From positions 248,001 through 312,000 of the IMG/VR virus record IMGVR_UViG_3300026078_000017: a DNA stretch of 64,000 bases; one strand, 5' to 3'. A program made the translations under genes and the position numbers. Shown here one piece after another: positions 6,666-53,568 of this stretch (positions are counted from its first letter, which is position 1; each line of letters begins with the position of its first letter). Below the pieces are notes generated by a model. The model was not told where the DNA came from and made no database searches. It saw only the letters and a program-made list of their open reading frames with translations.

Positions 6666-6684
6666 GAGAATACCTTAGCAGGAT

Positions 6685-6975
6685 TTATTTGAACGTCAAG
6701 ACTTTTTGTGTGGGAAGCTGCATTTGCCACACATTAGGTTCACTGTCTGGATAATCAACTGAAATCCACACATGACGTTTTATTTGCGCTGCGATGTCAA
6801 GAGCAAGGTATTCATTCGCTGACAGTTTTTTCAGTACGAGGTAAAAAGTAATTGTGGTAATATGACCTGGATCTGAATACTTTCTGAGATGATCAGAGTG
6901 AGCAAGAAGCGTACCACGAACAATTCGTTTTTTGTCTATCGGAATCACTGCCGTCGTCTCAGGTGAGGAAAACAA
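6685..6975 (-). CDS. small SH3/KOW-like protein (GD family)
   Basis: VRGTLL...FYLVLK...ALDI. Confidence 0.65.
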   Translation of the reverse strand: MFSSPETTAVIPIDKKRIVRGTLLAHSDHLRKYSDPGHITTITFYLVLKKLSANEYLALDIAAQIKRHVWISVDYPDSEPNVWQMQLPTQKVLTFK

Positions 6976-8655: not shown

Positions 8656-8727
8656 TGGGCCATCGGGGTAACGATCCCCGTTCGTCGGATTAAAAGTCCG
8701 ATGCTTCACCATTAAAGCTTATAGCCC
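8656..8727 (-). tRNA. tRNA-Lys (UUU)
   Basis: Full cloverleaf GGGCTAT/ATGGCCC; anticodon arm TCGGA-CTTTTAA-TCCGA; atypical T-loop ATCGTTA; no encoded CCA. Confidence 0.9.
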
Positions 8728-9065
8728 TAAATCACCAAAACACCAGCATGAATCTCACCGTGACAATTAGAGCATACCAAAACGCACTTGTCAAGCTCTT
8801 CTTTTACTCGTTTCCACGACAGAGCCCAATTGCCGCTTATTTGAAATTCCTTGGTTGAGGGATCGAGATGATGAAAATGTAATGACTGTTTACATTTACT
8901 ATACCCGCAAACAATACATGAATCACCTTTGTAAGCGAAGCACTGTCGTGCTCTTTCTTTACGCCTGGCGTTGACAAGACAGGTATTACACTGCGTTTTG
9001 GTATGGCCTGCTTTTTTACTATAGCTATATGTGCGAGTGCATTGTGAACATTGATTCATGTTCAC
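8727..9065 (-). CDS. HNH homing endonuclease
   Basis: CxxC pairs, LHFHHLDP..K...KCVLVCSNCHGEIH. Confidence 0.9.
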   Translation of the reverse strand: MNMNQCSQCTRTYSYSKKAGHTKTQCNTCLVNARRKERARQCFAYKGDSCIVCGYSKCKQSLHFHHLDPSTKEFQISGNWALSWKRVKEELDKCVLVCSNCHGEIHAGVLVI

Positions 9066-9620: not shown

Positions 9621-9665
9621 TTGAATATCCTAGCAGGCTGAAGGATTTTGTCAAGAAGATTTGTT

Positions 9666-12858: not shown

Positions 12859-13122
12859 TTACTTCTTCTCACCGTATTTCTTTTCGTAGTTTCGCACGTA
12901 TTCGGTCATGCTAGGACTGAGCAAGTCACAATCAGCCAGAAAGGTCAGACACCCTTCGTACTGTGTCAACTTGTCGCTGTCAAGCGTGCACTTGAATCGT
13001 GCATCCTCATGATTGCCACGGCGCAAGTGTGTCACAGCTTGCCTAAGCACTTCCGTGCCACGACCGTTGTTGACAGTACGATTGTAGGCTTCTACCTTAT
13101 CGGCCAGTTCATCGTTTGTCAT
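12859..13122 (-). CDS. hypothetical protein
   Basis: Follows promoter TTGCAT..TGGTAAGAT. Confidence 0.7.
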   Translation of the reverse strand: MTNDELADKVEAYNRTVNNGRGTEVLRQAVTHLRRGNHEDARFKCTLDSDKLTQYEGCLTFLADCDLLSPSMTEYVRNYEKKYGEKK

Positions 13123-13160
13123 GTGCTTATCTTACCAGGCTTTTGACAGAATGCAAGCCC

Positions 13161-13535
13161 TTACTTCTGAGATTCGTTGTAGGTTTGCCGAAGTAGGTGC
13201 TTTGCGTAATTTACACTACTCCGCAGAGAAGTTACCCACGTTGCACCGCATTTTCCTTCCATCTTGACTATGAATTCATGGTCATCCACGATATCACGAA
13301 GGAGTTGACGCATTGTGTCAAGCTCTTTCTTGAGCTTGACGATTTCGGTTTCTTCCTGTACGACTGGAGCGGTGTATTCCACTTCGGTCATCACGATCGA
13401 CAACCCTGCATCGGACGCCAGCGCCCAGAAACACCGTGCTTCATCCGAGAAAATCCACTGTTGAGCATCGGGCTCGATGAAAAACGAAGCGATCTCACGT
13501 CCAGTGGCAATGTCTTTGACAACGGCGATTTCCAT
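13161..13535 (-). CDS. hypothetical protein with coiled coil
   Basis: MEIAVVKD start, AAGGA RBS, own promoter. Confidence 0.7.
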   Translation of the reverse strand: MEIAVVKDIATGREIASFFIEPDAQQWIFSDEARCFWALASDAGLSIVMTEVEYTAPVVQEETEIVKLKKELDTMRQLLRDIVDDHEFIVKMEGKCGATWVTSLRSSVNYAKHLLRQTYNESQK

Positions 13536-13603
13536 TGTGTCCGTCCTTTGAATATAAAGAAAGCTTATCACGATTTTTCTGTCGTGCAAGCTTTCTTTTT
13601 GTA

Positions 13604-13694
13604 TGGTTGATTTCTGGAATCGAACCAGATCCGTTCCTGCGGTATGCCGGAACATGCTCCCTCTAGGACTTCCGCCCCTTACAACAAATCAACC
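13604..13694 (-). ncRNA. tRNA-like RNA with non-canonical D and anticodon arms
   Basis: Acceptor GGTTGATT/AATCAACC; perfect T-arm TCTGG-TTCGATT-CCAGA; GTTCC/GGAAC arm with 11-nt loop. Confidence 0.6.
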
Positions 13695-13711
13695 GTGACC
13701 CTAGGAACCTC

Positions 13712-13969
13712 TCAGAACGACTTTTCGATCGTCCAACCTGCCGACTTGAGGGTGATCTCGAAAGCCCGCAGAATCGAATTCTGGTGGCGCGTGGTGGTAC
13801 GCGAGCGCGTCTGACCAAAGAACCGAATCGACTTCTTGACACGATCGACGATCGCGATGTTCATGTCGTAGGAGTGAACGTGATCGCCCTTCATCGTCAG
13901 TGCGCCACTGACGCAACCAAGGCCAGTGTTGCAGAAATCGACGAATTCGGAGTCGCGATACTTTGCCAT
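13712..13969 (-). CDS. conserved phage hypothetical protein (SY...S-x-TT-x-H-Q type)
   Basis: HSYDMNIA...SRTTTRHQN; strong AAAGAAAGAGGATA leader. Confidence 0.75.
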   Translation of the reverse strand: MAKYRDSEFVDFCNTGLGCVSGALTMKGDHVHSYDMNIAIVDRVKKSIRFFGQTRSRTTTRHQNSILRAFEITLKSAGWTIEKSF

Positions 13970-14140
13970 TTCGATATCCTCTTTCTTTTCCGTGTCAGTC
14001 AGTGGATAGATATACTTTACCAGAAACCAAGTCAGAGTCAAGAACGATTTTGCTTTTTCTCGTGTTCCTGACGCATGGCAAGGATTTCCGACAGAGATCC
14101 GATTTTGTACTGAATCCCTGGGAAAATGCAAGAACCAAAT

Positions 14141-15662: not shown

Positions 15663-15968
15663 AACTAGCAGGAAAATACTTGCGTGCAACCTGCAATATG
15701 GCTTGCGGGGTTTTAGGTTTCTGCTATTATGATCTTACTCCAGAAGGAGGGGAGAATGAGGGATGGGAATTTTCAGGTTGGCACGGTTAGTGCTATCGCA
15801 ATCCCTAGACCATCGTACCAAACTCACTTGGCATAAAACTTTCCCAAAAAGATTTCTTGCTTCTGACGTCAAGCCTGCTAAAGTGTTGATTGTTGAAGGC
15901 GAGACGAAAGAGACGAGAAAAGAGACTCAAAAAAATCTCTTGACGAAGTTTCCGAGTCTGCTAAAGTA
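15663..15968. promoter_or_regulatory. divergence point with clustered promoters
   Basis: One leftward and at least three rightward TTG..TGCTA promoters in an ORF-poor interval. Confidence 0.6.
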
Positions 15969-35487: not shown

Positions 35488-36039
35488 CTAATATTTATTT
35501 GCTCGTTCTTTCCGTGTGTAGGTTGGCAAAAGAAGTGTATTATCACGATACGCAAATACCCAACCATTACATTTTTGAATGCGATTTTTGCACATACTAA
35601 CAATAGCTTCATTAGGAATATTACAGGCCCGAGATGCTTCACGAATACCGTTAAATTCCTTTATTTCTTGTGTGGCAATATTGTAACCATGAACAGGTTT
35701 CCGTTGATCTTTTTTAATCTTCATCACAACTGGAATTCCAGTCCACCTGTCTGAAACTGCTTTCCTTAGATTATAGCACGATCTCTGATTGTCATAAAAA
35801 AGGTTCAACCAGTCCTGTTCTCTCAATTCAAGATTTTCAATACAAGAAATTTCCAAGATTTGGGTACTGAAATGTTCAGTACCTGACTTATTGAAGTCAC
35901 GTTGTAAAAATATGTTTGGATGCCGATTCCTTCGTAAGTCTCTAAAATGCCTATGCATTCGTGCCTCATATGAACGTGTACTTCCGACATAAAATCGACC
36001 ATTCAAATTGTTGTTGATAACGTAAACGCAAGAAATCAT
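35488..36039 (-). CDS. GIY-YIG homing endonuclease with NUMOD1-like C-terminus
   Basis: CVYVI...FYVGST...R...H.N..LQ...E; EFNGIREASR; AT-rich and antisense to neighbours. Confidence 0.9.
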   Translation of the reverse strand: MISCVYVINNNLNGRFYVGSTRSYEARMHRHFRDLRRNRHPNIFLQRDFNKSGTEHFSTQILEISCIENLELREQDWLNLFYDNQRSCYNLRKAVSDRWTGIPVVMKIKKDQRKPVHGYNIATQEIKEFNGIREASRACNIPNEAIVSMCKNRIQKCNGWVFAYRDNTLLLPTYTRKERANKY

Positions 36040-36178
36040 AGAGTTATTGTTGTTGCACACATGATTTGATGGGTAAAGAAGAAAGAAAGAAGTTGACTTC
36101 CTAAGCTCAGGTGCTAAACCAAGGTAATCGGAAAGCGGAACCCCGCTAACAAACAAAAGAAGAAAAGAGGATACAGTA

Positions 36179-36457
36179 ATGAAGATTGGAATGCATGTTT
36201 CGGTGATCGAGTCGGGTGCGCGTGGTGTGCTTGTCGGCCTTGAGGGTGAGACGGCTACGGTTCGTCTCCGCAATGAGGACAAGACGCTTTCGGCCAGCGA
36301 GAGCACGTATGCGGTGAGTGCACTCAAGGGTGAGAAGGGTCGTCCGGTTCGTCTGGATCGCCTTGCCGCTCAGGATGCCACGGTGACGGCTGAGGCTCCC
36401 GCTGCGGAGACGGCTGTCGAGTCGGAGACGTCCACGGATGAGGTTTCGGCTGCCTGA
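36179..36457 (+). CDS. small SH3-like KGRP protein
   Basis: MKIGMHV...GETATVRL...KGRPVRL; strong leader. Confidence 0.8.
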   Translation: MKIGMHVSVIESGARGVLVGLEGETATVRLRNEDKTLSASESTYAVSALKGEKGRPVRLDRLAAQDATVTAEAPAAETAVESETSTDEVSAA

Positions 36458-36888: not shown

Positions 36889-36973
36889 ACTCCTGGATCC
36901 AGCGGGTAAGGAACCGTCCTCTTAAACGACAGTGGGTGATAACCCAATGCAGGTTCGAATCCTGCCAGGAGTC
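36889..36973 (+). tRNA. type II (long variable arm) tRNA, probably Leu-derived, aberrant anticodon arm
   Basis: ACTCCTG/CAGGAGT acceptor; GCAGG-TTCGAAT-CCTGC; variable arm TGGGT/ACCCA; anticodon loop CTCTTAAAC ambiguous. Confidence 0.7.
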
Positions 36974-39553: not shown

Positions 39554-39590
39554 TCCTTGACGCCATCTTGAAATCTGGTAAGATACTCCT

Positions 39591-46604: not shown

Positions 46605-46628
46605 CTCCACAACAGGTTGAGGTCACTC

Positions 46629-47513
46629 ATGGGTTGTCTGAATTCGCAGGGTCAATTCTCTCACTGGTTTGCAAATATACACCTGAGTGGGGCTTGTAAT
46701 CGATCCTGTTACTTCTGTATCGGGCAACACATGCCCGGTCTTGACCCGATCAACAACCTGGACACTTGGCCTTTGCCAGGCATGGACGAGTTTTTGACGA
46801 AGTGTCGAGAGCAGGGCGTTAAGGAAATTAACCTGACTGGCTCTGACACCGATCCCTTGCTCTATCGTCATCTTCCTGAGTTGACGGCATTTCTCCGAAA
46901 GGAGATTCCTGGTGCCATCCTCGGAATCCGGACGAACGGGGTTTTGGAAGAGCGGCACCCTGACTTGATTGACCTGTTTGACAAGGGAAGCATTTCTGTC
47001 ACTTCCTTTGACTCGGCAATCTACAAGAAGACCATGGGTCATGGAAGCCCGCCAGACGTCGCAGGATTTCGTCAGAGGCATCCGGGGTTCCGGGTGAAGG
47101 GGAACGTGGTCCTATGTCCTGAGACCGTCACAAAGAATTCTAATGGCTTCTGTGACCTTGATGCGACCTTGAAATACTTCGCTTCCAATGGATTTGAGAA
47201 GGTCAACATCCGTGAGCCTTACGGGCAGACTCATATTGGTGATCCGCTCAAGGGATCTCAGTTTGAGCAGATTGGTACGATCTATGCCATGCCGATTTAC
47301 AATGTCTATGGCATGCAGGTTACCTATTGGGATGTTCACTACGTGGAGGTTGAATCTGTCAATCTCTATGCCAACGCCAACGTGTCTGTGACTTATCCAG
47401 TCACACTTGGACATGACCCTGTTCTTGGCACGGTGTTTGACCAGAGCAAGTTCTTGCAGGGTCGTCAGCATGAACAGTGGAAAAACAAGCGAAAGCTTTC
47501 GGTGGTGAGGTAA
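46629..47513 (+). CDS. radical SAM enzyme
   Basis: CNRSCYFC (CxxxCxxC), NLTGSDTDP, IRTNG. Confidence 0.9.
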   Translation: MGCLNSQGQFSHWFANIHLSGACNRSCYFCIGQHMPGLDPINNLDTWPLPGMDEFLTKCREQGVKEINLTGSDTDPLLYRHLPELTAFLRKEIPGAILGIRTNGVLEERHPDLIDLFDKGSISVTSFDSAIYKKTMGHGSPPDVAGFRQRHPGFRVKGNVVLCPETVTKNSNGFCDLDATLKYFASNGFEKVNIREPYGQTHIGDPLKGSQFEQIGTIYAMPIYNVYGMQVTYWDVHYVEVESVNLYANANVSVTYPVTLGHDPVLGTVFDQSKFLQGRQHEQWKNKRKLSVVR

Positions 47514-51791: not shown

Positions 51792-52442
51792 ATGTTTTGG
51801 ATTTACGCGCTTCTTGATGAAAAAGGTTTTCCTAGATATGTTGGAAAAACCTATGACTTGAAAGAACGACTGAGAAATCATCTCAAAGAGAAAGGTCGTT
51901 GTCATCGAATCTGTTGGCTTAAATCTATGAAATCTAAGGGACTCAATCCCACATTGATTGCATTGGATTCTAAGCCAACAGAGCAAGAAGCTTTGGATGA
52001 AGAAGTTTTTTTGATATCTTATTTTCGTTATTTGGGTGCTGATTTAACCAACGGAACAGATGGTGGTGAAGGAATCTCTGGACACAAACATTCCTTAGAA
52101 ACAAGAAACAAAATGTCCAAAAGTCGGATAGGACATATAACTTCACCTGAAACTCGACGTAAGTTGTCTGAATCAAACAAAGGTAAACCACATAAAGGTG
52201 GATGGCATCATAATGAAACAAGTAAGAAAAAAATAACAGGTAGAAAACCAAGGCAAATTCAAGACTCGCATGGAAAAGTCTTTGCGTCTGTTCGTGAAGC
52301 TGCTAAAGTGTTTGGTGTAAGCATCGATCAAATCAAATATGCCCTTCAAAAGGGCACTCCCACCCACAAAGTACCAAGGTTACATTATGTTGAAGGTTCA
52401 AGAATATCTACTGACGCACACATTGAACGATTTAGCTCGTGA
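51792..52442 (+). CDS. GIY-YIG homing endonuclease with NUMOD3 repeats
   Basis: WIYAL...RYVGKT...R; LTNGTDGGEG; HSLETRNKMS / SPETRRKLS. Confidence 0.9.
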   Translation: MFWIYALLDEKGFPRYVGKTYDLKERLRNHLKEKGRCHRICWLKSMKSKGLNPTLIALDSKPTEQEALDEEVFLISYFRYLGADLTNGTDGGEGISGHKHSLETRNKMSKSRIGHITSPETRRKLSESNKGKPHKGGWHHNETSKKKITGRKPRQIQDSHGKVFASVREAAKVFGVSIDQIKYALQKGTPTHKVPRLHYVEGSRISTDAHIERFSS

Positions 52443-53568
52443 ACATGGCGTCTATTCTCGCTTCAGCACGAAAAATCCTTTGAAGTGGTCTCTAAATTAC
52501 GACCAGATCGAAGCGAAGGATGCAGATCCGATCGCTCAGGAGTGTCGTGGTCTGGTTCTTGCGACGGAAGAGCCGTTGGCAGACATGGATCCGACGCTTG
52601 GCGCAATGGGCGTTACGGTTGGCGAGACGAAGATTCGTGGTCTTCCCATGGGACGGTTTTTCAACTACGGCCAGGGCTCTGCCGCTACGGTTGACCTGGA
52701 TTCGCCTGACACGCGCTTCTGTGAGAAGCTCGACGGAACCCTGTGCATCATGTATTGGGATCGTCACCTTGGAGAGTGGTCCATTGCCACGCGATCTGTT
52801 CCAGACGCTGACCTTCCTATGGATGGTTTTGGCAATCAGACGTTCACGGATCTCTTCTGGAAGGCTTTTAAGGCTTCTGGTGGAATGATTTCGCAGTTGG
52901 ACTATGCACGTGGGTGGCATACCTTCTGTTTCGAGCTTTGCACGCCCGATAACCAGATTGTGGTCAAGTACCCGGACTACAAGGTTTATCTCCTGGCTGC
53001 TCGTGAGAACGAGACCGGAATCAACATGGATCCTCAGCCTTGGGCGGTCCAGATGTCGGTGGAGTGTGCTCCGACGTATCGTTTCGGCTCCACGGACGAA
53101 ATGCTGAATTTCGTTTCCTCGCGAAATCCCTTGGCTCACGAGGGAATCGTCGTTGTTGACAAGGACTTCAATCGAGTCAAGGTCAAGAATGCGGGATATC
53201 TCGCTTACAACAAGATCAAGGACTCTGTTGCAAAGTCTCCTCGTGCGGTAATGGAGATCGTTCTTCTTGGCAAGGAAGACGACGTTATGCCGCTCGTTCC
53301 CGAGCATGTGCAGAAGGTCATCCTTGACACCAAGGATCGCCTGGCGGCATTTTTGCGAGTCACGGACGAGGAATACACGGCTTGCTATCACACGGACCGT
53401 AAGACGTTTGCTCTTGCCATTCAGGCGGGTTCTGGTAACATGGGACCACAGATGGCACGATGGTCGGGAAAGTGTGCTTCTACCAAGGACTGGATCTTCT
53501 CTCAGCGGAAGGATGGAAATTGGTCAGATGGGTTCCTTGACTCGCTTATGCGTATGTGTAAGGAATAA
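52387..53568 (+). CDS. T4 Rnl1-like RNA ligase
   Basis: RFFNY, EKLDGT (motif I), FEL..P.NQIVV.Y, EGIVV (IV), RVKVK (V). Confidence 0.9.
   Translation: MLKVQEYLLTHTLNDLAREHGVYSRFSTKNPLKWSLNYDQIEAKDADPIAQECRGLVLATEEPLADMDPTLGAMGVTVGETKIRGLPMGRFFNYGQGSAATVDLDSPDTRFCEKLDGTLCIMYWDRHLGEWSIATRSVPDADLPMDGFGNQTFTDLFWKAFKASGGMISQLDYARGWHTFCFELCTPDNQIVVKYPDYKVYLLAARENETGINMDPQPWAVQMSVECAPTYRFGSTDEMLNFVSSRNPLAHEGIVVVDKDFNRVKVKNAGYLAYNKIKDSVAKSPRAVMEIVLLGKEDDVMPLVPEHVQKVILDTKDRLAAFLRVTDEEYTACYHTDRKTFALAIQAGSGNMGPQMARWSGKCASTKDWIFSQRKDGNWSDGFLDSLMRMCKE

What the first reader, a model, noticed from the sequence alone, without database searches (positions are those of the whole stretch)
13604..13694. Second tRNA mimic: perfect acceptor and T-arm, remodelled D and anticodon arms
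Seen (minus strand): GGTTGATT/AATCAACC acceptor, TCTGG-TTCGATT-CCAGA T-arm, an enlarged D region containing GGGGC-GGAA-GTCCT, and a GTTCC/GGAAC arm with an 11-nt loop containing CAT. It sits at the 3' end of a gene with a strong leader. Inference: the RNase P/Z-recognised top half is kept while decoding parts diverge, fitting a processing signal or decoy.
Basis: partly seen in the sequence, partly recalled or inferred. Interest (0 to 1): 0.68.

Follow-up and report, generated by a model that had tools for sequence, protein, structure and literature searches.

The report
Lone tRNA-shaped RNA in jumbo phage
A 91-base stretch of a 320-kb soil-type jumbo phage folds like a tRNA whose upper half is perfect but whose decoding half cannot work; it is real, not chance, but it is a one-off insertion with no relatives anywhere we could search, so its role (most likely a tRNA-style cutting/processing module or mimic) stays inferred.

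Summary
On the minus strand at 13604-13694 there is an 8-bp all-Watson-Crick acceptor stem stacked on a 5-bp T stem with a canonical UUCGAUU loop, a D region carrying a 14-nt GGAA-tetraloop hairpin, and a perfectly paired arm with an 11-nt loop. That top-half geometry occurs in 0 of 300 dinucleotide shuffles. It is not a tRNA by any standard test: ARAGORN calls nothing and Rfam gives only tRNA-Sec at 22.5 bits (threshold 47). The loop lacks U33 and a purine at 37.

It lies 17 nt after the stop of an 85-aa early gene and 6 nt before a terminator/promoter hairpin, so it is most likely co-transcribed and excised like the phage's own CCA-less tRNA-Lys.

It is a singleton. Pattern scans of IMG/VR, JGI metagenomes and GTDB genomes return only the source contig. 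In the nearest relatives (64-82% protein identity) the same junction is empty or holds unrelated structured inserts, so covariation cannot be tested.

Best reading: a tRNA-derived, non-decoding, tRNA-shaped RNA that keeps what RNase P, 3' trimming and the CCA-adding enzyme read. Whether it acts as an mRNA punctuation site or decoy, or is a young relic, is unresolved. It is a new variant of a known kind, of moderate to low interest.

The parts
13604..13694 (-). tRNA-shaped RNA element, 91 nt (90 nt plus the unpaired A at 13604)
   Evidence: Sequence. Fold -32.4 kcal/mol, z -2.99. Top-half geometry in 0 of 300 shuffles. Rfam tRNA-Sec 22.5 bits against a threshold of 47. No ARAGORN call at default settings.
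13687..13694 (-). Acceptor 5' strand, GGUUGAUU. It pairs with 13605-13612 in 8 Watson-Crick pairs. This can be read either as G-1:C73 plus 7 bp (tRNA-His-like) or as an 8/5 tRNA-Sec-like stem with discriminator A13604.
   Evidence: Compared with canonical tRNAs that share this acceptor, there is one extra A (13612) between T stem and acceptor (alignment).
13654..13686 (-). Enlarged D region. A short D stem (UGUU/AGCA in the minimum-free-energy fold; UGU/GCA in the alternative register) encloses a loop that still has A14/A15-like AA and an AGAGGGA tract (candidate G18 G19 A21).
   Evidence: With the hairpin removed in silico, ARAGORN at a 95% threshold draws a normal D arm with a 9-nt loop.
13665..13678 (-). 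14-nt hairpin GGGGC-GGAA-GUCCU (GNRA-type tetraloop). It sits where the D loop tolerates length variation (after position 15).
13633..13653 (-). Anticodon-position arm. The 5-bp Watson-Crick stem GUUCC/GGAAC can extend by G.A plus G-C (plus C-G), giving 7-8 stacked layers. The loop reads as 11, 7 (CAUACCG) or 5 (AUACC) nt. Position 33 is not U and position 37 is not a purine.
   Evidence: Rfam's tRNA-Sec model and ARAGORN -ps80 instead treat this arm as a variable arm.
13613..13629 (-). T arm UCUGG-UUCGAUU-CCAGA, with G53-C61 and a canonical T loop.
13605..13612 (-). Acceptor 3' strand AAUCAACC. No CCA is encoded; the following bases are AUAC.
   Evidence: The window's tRNA-Lys also lacks an encoded CCA.
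13556..13598 (-). 17-bp A/U-flanked hairpin, 6 nt after the element. It overlaps the promoter of the next gene (CTTGCAC ... TG-A-TAAGCT, 13562-13590). Read as a terminator/promoter module.
   Evidence: Fold of 13545-13694: -52.9 kcal/mol, z -5.83. Promoter family scan. Analogous promoter-embedded inverted repeats occur in relatives.
13712..13969 (-). Upstream 85-aa gene ('gene A'), whose 3' UTR holds the element. Its promoter is at 14014-14042.
   Evidence: Translation. Promoter. Relatives at 64-68% identity.
13161..13535 (-). Downstream 124-aa ORFan gene. Together with the element and its own promoter it is extra relative to the L011-type relatives.
   Evidence: Translation. No homologue among 1.84 billion representative proteins. 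No family hit. The AlphaFold2 model is poor, pLDDT 60.
12859..13122 (-). 87-aa gene. Its orthologue (82% identity) directly follows gene A in relatives L011-L013, and so marks the far edge of the inserted block. Its promoter is at 13129-13157.

Best explanation
This is a tRNA-derived RNA gene that keeps a tRNA's shape but can no longer decode.

1. Transcription (inferred). It is transcribed as the 3' end of the 85-aa early gene's mRNA, from the promoter at 14014-14042. Transcription probably stops at the hairpin at 13556-13598.
2. Recognition (inferred from established knowledge). The transcript offers 13 stacked Watson-Crick pairs (8-bp acceptor plus 5-bp T stem), a canonical T loop and D-loop guanines for the elbow. 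These are the features that RNase P, the 3'-end enzymes (RNase Z or exonucleases) and the CCA-adding enzyme recognise.
3. Processing (inferred). These enzymes should cut it out of the mRNA and finish it, as they must do for the phage's CCA-less tRNA-Lys.
4. Product (loop features shown; consequence inferred). The result would be a stable RNA of about 90 nt, together with an upstream mRNA that has lost its 3' structure. The product cannot read codons. Its anticodon-position loop lacks U33 and purine 37, its stem is 2 bp too long, and its D loop carries an extra GNRA hairpin.

All helices are intact and the changes are confined to loops. I therefore think the fold is maintained by selection rather than decaying. 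What the released RNA does afterwards (nothing, or mimic/decoy) is not resolved.
For: - The sequence and fold are tRNA-like. All 13 top-half pairs are Watson-Crick, and U8, A14-15, a GG tract, A21, G26, G53-C61 and UUCGAUU are all present.
- The geometry is far beyond chance: 0.01 expected for 7 bp, and 0 of 300 shuffles for 8 bp.
- The whole-length Rfam match is to the tRNA clan only (tRNA-Sec, model positions 1-91, 22.5 bits, E 0.046).
- Deleting only the 14-nt hairpin in silico makes ARAGORN draw a complete cloverleaf at a 95% threshold. The departures from a tRNA are therefore two loop changes and one extra A:U pair, not scattered substitutions.
- It has the same strand and transcriptional context as the neighbouring genes. 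There are 17 nt after the stop codon with no promoter in between, and a strong hairpin 6 nt downstream.
- The window's real tRNA-Lys and the second tRNA-like element are likewise embedded between same-strand ORFs and lack an encoded CCA.
Against: - There is no homologue anywhere, so no covariation and no evidence of purifying selection.
- Relatives lack it.
- It sits in a hypervariable junction where inserts turn over even between contigs with identical gene A protein. That fits a recent, possibly neutral acquisition.
- In a 241-nt context the minimum-free-energy fold prefers an alternative in which the 5' flank (GGUUCC) pairs with the GGAAC strand.
- There are no expression data.
- RNase P cleavage, CCA addition and stability are all inferred, not shown.
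Confidence: 0.48

Rival explanations
1. Neutral relic. A phage tRNA gene was disabled by a few insertions (D-loop hairpin, anticodon loop, one A at the T/acceptor junction). It persists only because the disabling is recent. It may still be cut by RNase P, but nothing selects for that.
For: - It is a singleton in all collections.
- It is absent from relatives.
- It lies in a hyperplastic junction with rapid insert turnover.
- The adjacent 124-aa gene is an ORFan.
- The same window holds a second sub-threshold tRNA-like element. This suggests tRNA genes come and go in this genome.
Against: - All five helices are perfectly paired, with not one stem mismatch in 13 top-half pairs plus 5 anticodon-stem pairs.
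- The inserted 14 nt form their own perfect tetraloop hairpin, at the one D-loop site that tolerates extra length.
- Random decay should hit stems as often as loops.
Confidence: 0.25
2. Dedicated trans-acting tRNA mimic (decoy or sponge). The released RNA occupies a host tRNA-binding factor. Candidates are a tRNA-cleaving defence nuclease, a modification enzyme, or an aminoacyl-tRNA synthetase read through the G-1:C73-like end. This would protect real tRNAs or blunt a defence.
For: - The top half is intact and the bottom half is deliberately non-canonical.
- The phage invests in tRNA repair and replacement. It has an Rnl1-type RNA ligase (phrog_562, 1.8e-39) and a tRNA-Lys(UUU) with unusual tertiary positions.
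- Jumbo phages are known to carry RNA-repair systems and tRNA-like partners (PMC7824862).
- The 8-bp end can be read as G-1:C73, the main HisRS determinant (established knowledge).
Against: - No partner protein was identified. The neighbours are ORFans without family hits.
- The loop does not copy the anticodon loop of any known nuclease target.
- G-1:C73 pairing has about a 25% chance expectation.
- There is no conservation.
Confidence: 0.15
3. A working but structurally unusual decoding tRNA, with an 8/5 acceptor-T domain, long anticodon stem, short variable loop and extra D-loop arm. An example would be a Val(UAC)-type or other reader.
For: - With the D hairpin removed, ARAGORN proposes a cloverleaf with a 7-nt loop CAUACCG and anticodon UAC.
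- 8/5 stems and 6-bp anticodon stems exist in tRNA-Sec (Rfam alignment).
- A canonical bacterial tRNA-Val shares the acceptor and T-arm sequences.
Against: - Position 33 is A and position 37 is C in that loop, and the closing pair is G.A.
- There is no call at default ARAGORN settings and the element is below the Rfam thresholds.
- The shared acceptor also occurs in Cys, Ile, Ser and Tyr tRNAs, so it carries no isotype signal.
- Stop-codon recoding is not indicated in the window.
Confidence: 0.05
4. Not an RNA element at all. Either it is a chance fold, or it is the 5' part of a longer 164-aa version of the downstream ORF (13161-13655), whose in-frame ATG lies inside the element.
For: the ORF listing reports an uninterrupted 164-aa ORF starting at ATG 13655.
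Against: - The geometry occurs in 0 of 300 shuffles.
- The internal ATG has GGGAG only 1 nt upstream.
- A family-type promoter (13562-13590) and a well-spaced AAGGA serve the ATG at 13535.
- Forty stop-free codons are expected by chance about 15% of the time.
Confidence: 0.02

Closest known systems
Canonical bacterial/phage tRNA (Rfam RF00005)
   Same: - Acceptor stem stacked on a 5-bp T stem.
- UUCGAUU T loop and G53-C61.
- U8, A14, GG and A21 candidates in the D region.
- 5-bp stem at the anticodon position.
- Embedded co-directionally among phage early genes, and CCA-less like the window's tRNA-Lys.
   Different: - 8-bp acceptor, from one extra A:U layer.
- 14-nt hairpin inside the D loop.
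- Anticodon stem extendable to 7 layers, and a loop without U33 or R37.
- 3-nt variable loop.
- Not called by ARAGORN and below the Rfam threshold.
Bacterial tRNA-Sec (Rfam RF01852) and related 8/4 and 9/3 'allo-tRNAs' (from memory: Mukai et al. 2017)
   Same: - 13-bp acceptor-T domain in 8/5 format.
- A 5-bp stem with a 4-nt loop in the D region.
- Lengthened anticodon stem.
- About 90 nt overall.
- It is the best Rfam hit.
   Different: - 22.5 bits against a gathering score of 47.
- No UCA anticodon.
- No long variable arm if the GUUCC arm is the anticodon arm, and no anticodon arm if it is the variable arm.
tRNA-His acceptor end (G-1:C73)
   Same: The first G pairs with the C that would be position 73, giving the 8-bp stem typical of bacterial tRNA-His.
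   Different: - No GUG anticodon.
- No encoded CCA.
- The extra pair could equally be U8:A at the inner end of the stem.
- The pairing has about a 25% chance expectation.
Non-decoding tRNA-like RNAs released by tRNA processing enzymes. Examples, all from memory: phage T4 stable RNAs C and D in the tRNA cluster, Bacillus cereus tRNA-Other, MALAT1 mascRNA, MHV68 vtRNAs.
   Same: A tRNA-shaped top half is expected to be read by RNase P, RNase Z and the CCA enzyme. The bottom half is not competent for decoding. The gene is co-transcribed with other genes.
   Different: No sequence relationship is shown. Processing is not demonstrated here. The D-loop hairpin plus an 8-bp stem is not described for those RNAs, to my knowledge.
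tRNA punctuation of polycistronic transcripts (from memory: the mitochondrial model, and the E. coli secG-leuU and metT operons)
   Same: A tRNA-shaped unit lies directly after a coding sequence and before a terminator hairpin. RNase P cleavage would separate the mRNA from the structured 3' end.
   Different: In those cases the unit is a functional tRNA. Here it cannot decode.
Bacterial Y-RNA-like YrlA (a tRNA mimic bound by Rsr/Ro60)
   Same: It is a tRNA-mimicking non-coding RNA found in bacteria and some phages, linked to RNA repair (PMC7824862).
   Different: - In YrlA the RNA ends form the Ro-binding stem, and the tRNA-like module is closed at the 'acceptor'. Here the ends form the acceptor.
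- No Rfam Y-RNA hit on this element.
- No TROVE protein among the 23 ORFs scanned.
Promoter-early stem-loop (PeSL) cassettes of T4-type phages (from memory: Arbiol et al. 2010)
   Same: Small early genes are each preceded by a stem-loop/promoter module. Gene content at such junctions varies between close relatives.
   Different: This describes the neighbourhood, not the tRNA-like element itself. No homology with T4 was tested.

Membership tests
tRNA (RF00005 / ARAGORN definition) | Score at or above the family threshold with a covariance model or a tRNA detector | tested here: not met
   ARAGORN at default settings finds no gene here. Rfam at gathering thresholds gives no hit. In E-value mode the best clan member is tRNA-Sec at 22.5 bits, and RF00005 scores lower.
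tRNA (RF00005 / ARAGORN definition) | 7-nt anticodon loop with U33 and a purine at 37, closed by a 5-bp stem | tested here: not met
   The loop is 11 nt (GGCAUACCGCA). In the best 7-nt reading (CAUACCG), position 33 is A, position 37 is C, and a G.A mismatch lies one pair above the closing G-C pair.
tRNA (RF00005 / ARAGORN definition) | Acceptor stem directly stacked on a 5-bp T stem, with a canonical T loop | tested here: met
   8 + 5 Watson-Crick pairs, UUCGAUU, G53-C61.
tRNA (RF00005 / ARAGORN definition) | D arm of 3-4 bp with a 7-11-nt loop containing GG | tested here: inconclusive
   A 3-4-bp stem and the AGAGGGA tract are present, but the loop is 23-24 nt because of the 14-nt hairpin. 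It becomes a normal 9-nt loop if the hairpin is removed in silico.
tRNA-Sec (RF01852) | 8/5 (13-bp) acceptor-T domain | tested here: met
tRNA-Sec (RF01852) | UCA anticodon, a long variable arm, and a score at or above 47 bits | tested here: not met
   No UCA in any loop. The variable region is GGA (3 nt) in the minimum-free-energy fold. The score is 22.5 bits.
tRNA-His | G-1:C73 extra base pair | tested here: inconclusive
   The sequence allows it (G13694: C13605). The same helix can be read as a 7-bp stem plus U8:A, and a chance pair is expected about 1 time in 4.
tRNA-His | GUG anticodon | tested here: not met
   There is no GUG in the anticodon-position loop.
tmRNA tRNA-like domain | Detected by ARAGORN tmRNA mode or Rfam tmRNA; G3.U70 | tested here: not met
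   ARAGORN -m finds nothing. There is no Rfam tmRNA hit. The third pair is U-A.
YrlA / Y RNA | Ro-binding stem formed by the RNA ends, an Rfam Y-RNA match, and an Rsr/TROVE gene nearby | tested here: not met
   No Y-RNA hit on this element. The ends form the acceptor stem. None of the 23 ORFs scanned matches TROVE. The rest of the 320-kb genome was not examined.
RNase P / CCA-enzyme substrate (functional class, not a sequence family) | Cleavage at the acceptor 5' end and 3' CCA addition | not testable with these tools
   Only the structural prerequisites are shown. No expression or biochemical data are available.
Conserved structured RNA family | Homologues with compensatory base changes | tested here: not met
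   No homologue was found in any collection. Syntenic sites in relatives lack the element. No alignment could be built, so no covariation count was possible.

The most novel reading that the evidence does not exclude
A jumbo phage deliberately encodes a five-armed, non-decoding tRNA mimic: a tRNA L-shape with an added GNRA hairpin on the D loop and a His-like or Sec-like 8-bp end. It is released from an early mRNA by RNase P. It then acts in trans as a decoy for a host tRNA-targeting immune nuclease or a tRNA-binding enzyme. It would be one of several such RNA decoys that occupy a hypervariable 3'-UTR slot in this phage lineage, since relatives carry other structured inserts at the same slot.
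Probability: 0.13. Interest if true: 0.7.

Novelty: new variant of a known kind. Interest (0 to 1): 0.36.

Why it matters
If the fold is maintained and the RNA is processed, the element would show two things. First, phages use tRNA-shaped modules for something other than decoding, either mRNA punctuation or molecular mimicry. Second, the D loop can carry an extra arm without losing the features that processing enzymes read.

The neighbouring observation may be the more general lead. The 3'-UTR slot after this early gene holds a different structured RNA in each relative, which points to a hotspot where phages swap small structured RNAs.

As it stands the element is a single sequence without relatives or expression data. 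Its value is as a candidate for a simple RNase P / CCA / aminoacylation assay rather than as a finding.

Tried and rejected
- **GenBank phages.** blastn of the 1.5-kb region and of the 91-nt element gave nothing, or only 15-25-nt T-arm or coding coincidences. tblastn of both flanking proteins gave nothing.
- **IMG/VR pattern scans.** I tried the 25-mer of the T arm plus acceptor, a loop-anchored gapped pattern, a D-hairpin 16-mer and an anticodon-loop 17-mer. Results were the source contig only, plus chance hits inside coding sequences.
- **Acceptor plus T-loop geometry pattern.** GTDB genomes gave 0. JGI metagenomes gave the source contig only.
- **Canonical-geometry version of that pattern.** It found ordinary Val and Cys tRNAs in bacteria and Ile, Ser and Tyr tRNAs in phages, so the acceptor carries no isotype or ancestry signal.
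- **Relatives found through neighbour proteins.** The 85-aa and 87-aa genes led to contigs L004-L014 and L035-L040. They contain no tRNA, no tRNA-like top half and no Rfam hit.
- **The 124-aa neighbour.** There is no homologue among 1.84 billion representatives and no Pfam or PHROG family. The AlphaFold2 model is too poor (pLDDT 60) to search with.
- **Intron-containing tRNA.** ARAGORN -i gives only implausible low-threshold models.
- **tmRNA.** Nothing found.
- **Stop-codon recoding as a reason for an odd suppressor tRNA.** ORF statistics give no support, and the local genes read normally in code 11.
- **Base-pairing target for the 11-nt loop.** No complementary site elsewhere in the window.
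- **Multi-copy or mobile nature.** Neither the element nor the relatives' inserts are repeated.
- **The second tRNA-like element (36889-36973).** Its neighbour is an ORFan, and its T-arm/acceptor 24-mer hits only an unrelated tRNA-Arg.
- **Literature.** Two full-text searches found no description of a comparable phage element.

Full report
**What is there.**
Read on the minus strand, window 13694-13604 runs in this order:
- GGUUGAUU (acceptor 5' strand)
- a 33-nt D region
- a 21-nt arm, GUUCC-(11 nt)-GGAAC
- GGA
- UCUGG-UUCGAUU-CCAGA (T arm)
- AAUCAACC (acceptor 3' strand)
- an unpaired A

RNAfold gives a four-way junction with exactly these helices, at -32.4 kcal/mol and z = -2.99. None of 200 shuffles folds as well. 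All 8 acceptor pairs and all 5 T-stem pairs are Watson-Crick, and the T loop is the canonical UUCGAUU with G53-C61.

I counted this geometry: a Watson-Crick T stem around UUCRANN, immediately followed by a Watson-Crick acceptor strand whose partner lies 35-115 nt upstream. The window contains it twice (this element and 36889-36972). Shuffles give a mean of 0.01 with a 7-bp acceptor, and 0 of 300 with an 8-bp acceptor.

**It is not a tRNA by the usual tests.**
- ARAGORN finds only tRNA-Lys(UUU) at 8656-8727 in the window.
- Rfam at gathering thresholds finds only that same gene.
- With permissive settings, the only tRNA-clan hit on the element is tRNA-Sec. It covers the full model length at 22.5 bits against a gathering score of 47, E 0.046. 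That score comes from the acceptor and T arm. The model places the GUUCC arm as a variable arm and cannot align a D or anticodon arm.
- ARAGORN at lowered thresholds draws a similar class-II shape with poor D and anticodon arms.
- The tmRNA and intron modes give nothing credible.

**How it departs from a tRNA.**
Numbered as a tRNA, the element keeps U8, G9, A14, A15, an AGAGGGA tract that can supply G18, G19 and A21, G26, G53-C61 and the T loop. I see four departures.
1. One extra A (13612) lies between the T stem and the acceptor 3' strand. It pairs with U8 and makes the stem 8 bp. This shows in an alignment with canonical tRNAs that share the acceptor. The same helix can be read as G-1:C73 (His-like) or as 8/5 (Sec-like).
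2. A 14-nt hairpin, GGGGC-GGAA-GUCCU, sits after A15, in the part of the D loop that tolerates length variation.
3. The anticodon-position stem can stack 7-8 layers: GUUCC/GGAAC, then G.A, G-C and C-G.
4. The loop has no U at 33 and no purine at 37, and the variable loop is 3 nt.

Removing only the 14-nt hairpin in silico is enough for ARAGORN, at a 95% threshold, to draw a full cloverleaf. That cloverleaf has a 9-nt D loop and a 7-nt loop CAUACCG, nominal anticodon UAC, with A33 and C37. The element is therefore a tRNA plus a few discrete loop and junction changes. It is not a tRNA eroded by scattered substitutions, and no stem carries a mismatch. I take this as the main internal argument that the fold is maintained. 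It is an inference from one sequence.

**Genomic setting.**
The window is positions 248,001-312,000 of a 320,479-bp contig (IMGVR_UViG_3300026078_000017 = Ga0207702_10000008). Several features mark it as a jumbo phage:
- about 140 small ORFs
- an Rnl1-type RNA ligase, GIY-YIG and HNH homing endonucleases, and a radical-SAM protein

No close cultured relative was found.

Small genes are preceded by a recurrent sigma-70-type promoter with an extended -10, of the form cTTGAC-N14-TGnTAARRT. The layout around the element, all on the minus strand, is as follows.
- The element starts 17 nt after the stop of an 85-aa gene (13712-13969). That gene has such a promoter at 14014-14042 and a strong Shine-Dalgarno leader. 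No promoter lies between the stop and the element.
- Six nucleotides after the element comes a 17-bp A/U-flanked hairpin (13598-13556). It overlaps the next promoter (13562-13590). Element plus hairpin fold at z = -5.83.
- The next gene is a 124-aa ORFan (13161-13535).

Relatives show the same kind of inverted repeat wrapped around their promoters. I read it as a terminator/promoter module.

The simplest transcript model is promoter, gene A, element, terminator hairpin. This is the layout of a tRNA gene at the end of an operon. The window's tRNA-Lys and the second tRNA-like element are also wedged between same-strand ORFs and lack an encoded CCA. The host must therefore mature CCA-less precursors.

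**Comparative evidence.**
Two neighbour genes led to relatives.
- The 85-aa protein has three relatives at 64-68% identity, on contigs L004-L014.
- The 87-aa gene at 12859-13122 has five relatives at 68-82% identity, including one on a contig of about 290 kb.

At the same junction, these relatives show three arrangements.
- In L011-L013, the stop of gene A is followed within about 10 nt by the promoter and the 87-aa orthologue (82% identity).
- In L004, L005 and L007 the junction holds an unrelated structured insert of about 160 nt.
- In L006 and L008-L010 the junction holds a different insert of about 190 nt (z = -4.07). This is so even where gene A encodes the identical protein.

None of these loci contains a tRNA, a tRNA-like top half or an Rfam hit. 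That includes 20 kb of the large relative. Relative to the L011 type, the window carries an extra block of about 550 nt: element, promoter hairpin and the 124-aa ORFan. That ORFan has no homologue among 1.84 billion representative proteins.

Direct searches for the element also failed. A 25-mer, gapped loop-anchored patterns, a D-hairpin 16-mer, a loop 17-mer and an acceptor plus T-loop geometry pattern returned only the source contig or chance coding hits. These covered IMG/VR, JGI metagenomes and GTDB genomes. blastn against GenBank phages gave only 15-25-nt coincidences.

Canonical tRNAs with the same acceptor sequence exist, but they are of many isotypes: Val, Cys, Ile, Ser and Tyr. They say nothing about ancestry.

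The element is a singleton in a hypervariable junction. No alignment, and hence no covariation test, is possible.

**Mechanism.**
From established knowledge of tRNA maturation, RNase P, RNase Z and the CCA-adding enzyme read the acceptor/T coaxial stack and the T-loop/D-loop elbow, not the anticodon. The element presents these features intact.

I therefore think the most likely course has four steps.
1. It is co-transcribed with gene A.
2. RNase P cuts at its 5' end.
3. Its 3' end is trimmed and CCA-tailed.
4. It persists as a tRNA-shaped RNA of about 90 nt that cannot decode, while the upstream mRNA loses its 3' structure.

The structural prerequisites and the context are shown. Transcription, cleavage, stability and any downstream role are inferred.

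The alternatives I weighed are:
- a young neutral relic of a phage tRNA gene, favoured by singleton status and the turnover at this site
- a dedicated decoy for a tRNA-binding host factor, suggested by the phage's RNA ligase and its odd tRNA-Lys, but with no partner identified
- a working unusual tRNA, disfavoured by A33/C37 and the detector failures
- coding sequence or chance, disfavoured by the shuffles and the promoter/Shine-Dalgarno layout

One caution applies. In a 241-nt context the minimum-free-energy fold pairs the 5' flank GGUUCC with the GGAAC strand instead. The precursor may therefore have a competing fold.

**Comparison with known systems.**
The element works like a tRNA-processing substrate or tRNA mimic.
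- It shares the 8/5 format with tRNA-Sec and a possible G-1:C73 with tRNA-His, but it fails the defining anticodon and score tests of both.
- It differs from YrlA-type Y RNAs in topology, and no Ro/TROVE gene was seen among the ORFs scanned (background in PMC7824862).
- Non-decoding tRNA-like RNAs in phage and viral genomes are the closest functional analogues. tRNA punctuation of operon transcripts is another. Examples from memory are T4 RNAs C and D, MHV68 vtRNAs, mascRNA and secG-leuU.

I found no description of a tRNA-like RNA combining an 8-bp stem, a D-loop hairpin and a lengthened anticodon stem. The literature search was shallow.

**Verdict.**
The element is a new variant of a known kind, a phage-encoded tRNA-derived, non-decoding RNA, and is unique to this genome as far as public data show. 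Interest is moderate to low until a processing assay or additional genomes are available.

Noticed in passing
window 8656-8727 (-) and 8727-9059 (-): The only bona fide tRNA, tRNA-Lys(UUU), has A at position 8 with U as the first D-loop base. Its T loop is AUCGUUA (A54...U58). Both tertiary reverse-Hoogsteen pairs (U8-A14 and T54-A58) therefore look swapped. An HNH homing-endonuclease ORF (phrog_2255, 8.6e-26) ends exactly at the tRNA's 5' end. Relatives of this phage lack both within the 20 kb examined.
   Followed up: partly
window 36889-36973 (+): A second sub-threshold tRNA-like element (RF00005, 26.5 bits against 29). It has a Watson-Crick 7-bp acceptor, a canonical T arm, a class-II-type variable arm and a defective anticodon arm. 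It is wedged between two same-strand ORFs. Its neighbour is an ORFan, and its T-arm/acceptor 24-mer hits only an unrelated tRNA-Arg in IMG/VR, so it too is a singleton.
   Followed up: partly
L004:5259-5420, L006:1147-1340 (also L005, L007-L010); compare L011:1245-1300: The junction after the 85-aa gene is hypervariable. It is empty in L011-L013. It holds one structured insert of about 160 nt in L004, L005 and L007. It holds a different insert of about 190 nt (z = -4.07) in L006 and L008-L010, even between contigs whose 85-aa protein is identical. None matches Rfam, and none is repeated elsewhere in the fetched DNA.
   Followed up: partly
window, e.g. 13562-13590, 13129-13157, 14014-14042, 9627-9655, 6672-6700 (all -), 15939-15967, 39556-39584 (+): A recurrent early-type promoter, cTTGAC-N14-TGnTAARRT (extended -10), lies in front of many small genes. 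It is often embedded in an inverted repeat that looks like a combined terminator/promoter module. Several have the start codon only 7-10 nt after the -10 (possibly leaderless). This is reminiscent of the PeSL cassettes of T4-type phages.
   Followed up: partly
window 52339-53568 (+); 35488-36327 (-); 51792-52442 (+); 46617-47513 (+): An Rnl1-type RNA ligase (phrog_562, 1.8e-39) has a GIY-YIG/NUMOD3 homing endonuclease directly upstream and overlapping it. There is also a second GIY-YIG endonuclease and a radical-SAM protein. This fits a tRNA-repair-capable jumbo phage that carries many selfish endonucleases.
   Followed up: no
L041:6698-6791, L042:6504-6597, L044:5604-5697 (all -): Unrelated IMG/VR phage contigs carry a 94-nt tRNA that ARAGORN calls Ile(UAU). 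It has a long variable arm, which is unusual for tRNA-Ile, and sits inside a tRNA cluster.
   Followed up: no
window 13695-13711 (-): The 17-nt spacer between the stop codon and the element contains GGUUCCUAGGG. This repeats the GUUCC stem strand and resembles the CCUAGAGGG tract inside the element. It can pair with the GGAAC strand and gives a competing fold in long-context folding. It may be a trace of how the element arose, or a precursor switch.
   Followed up: no
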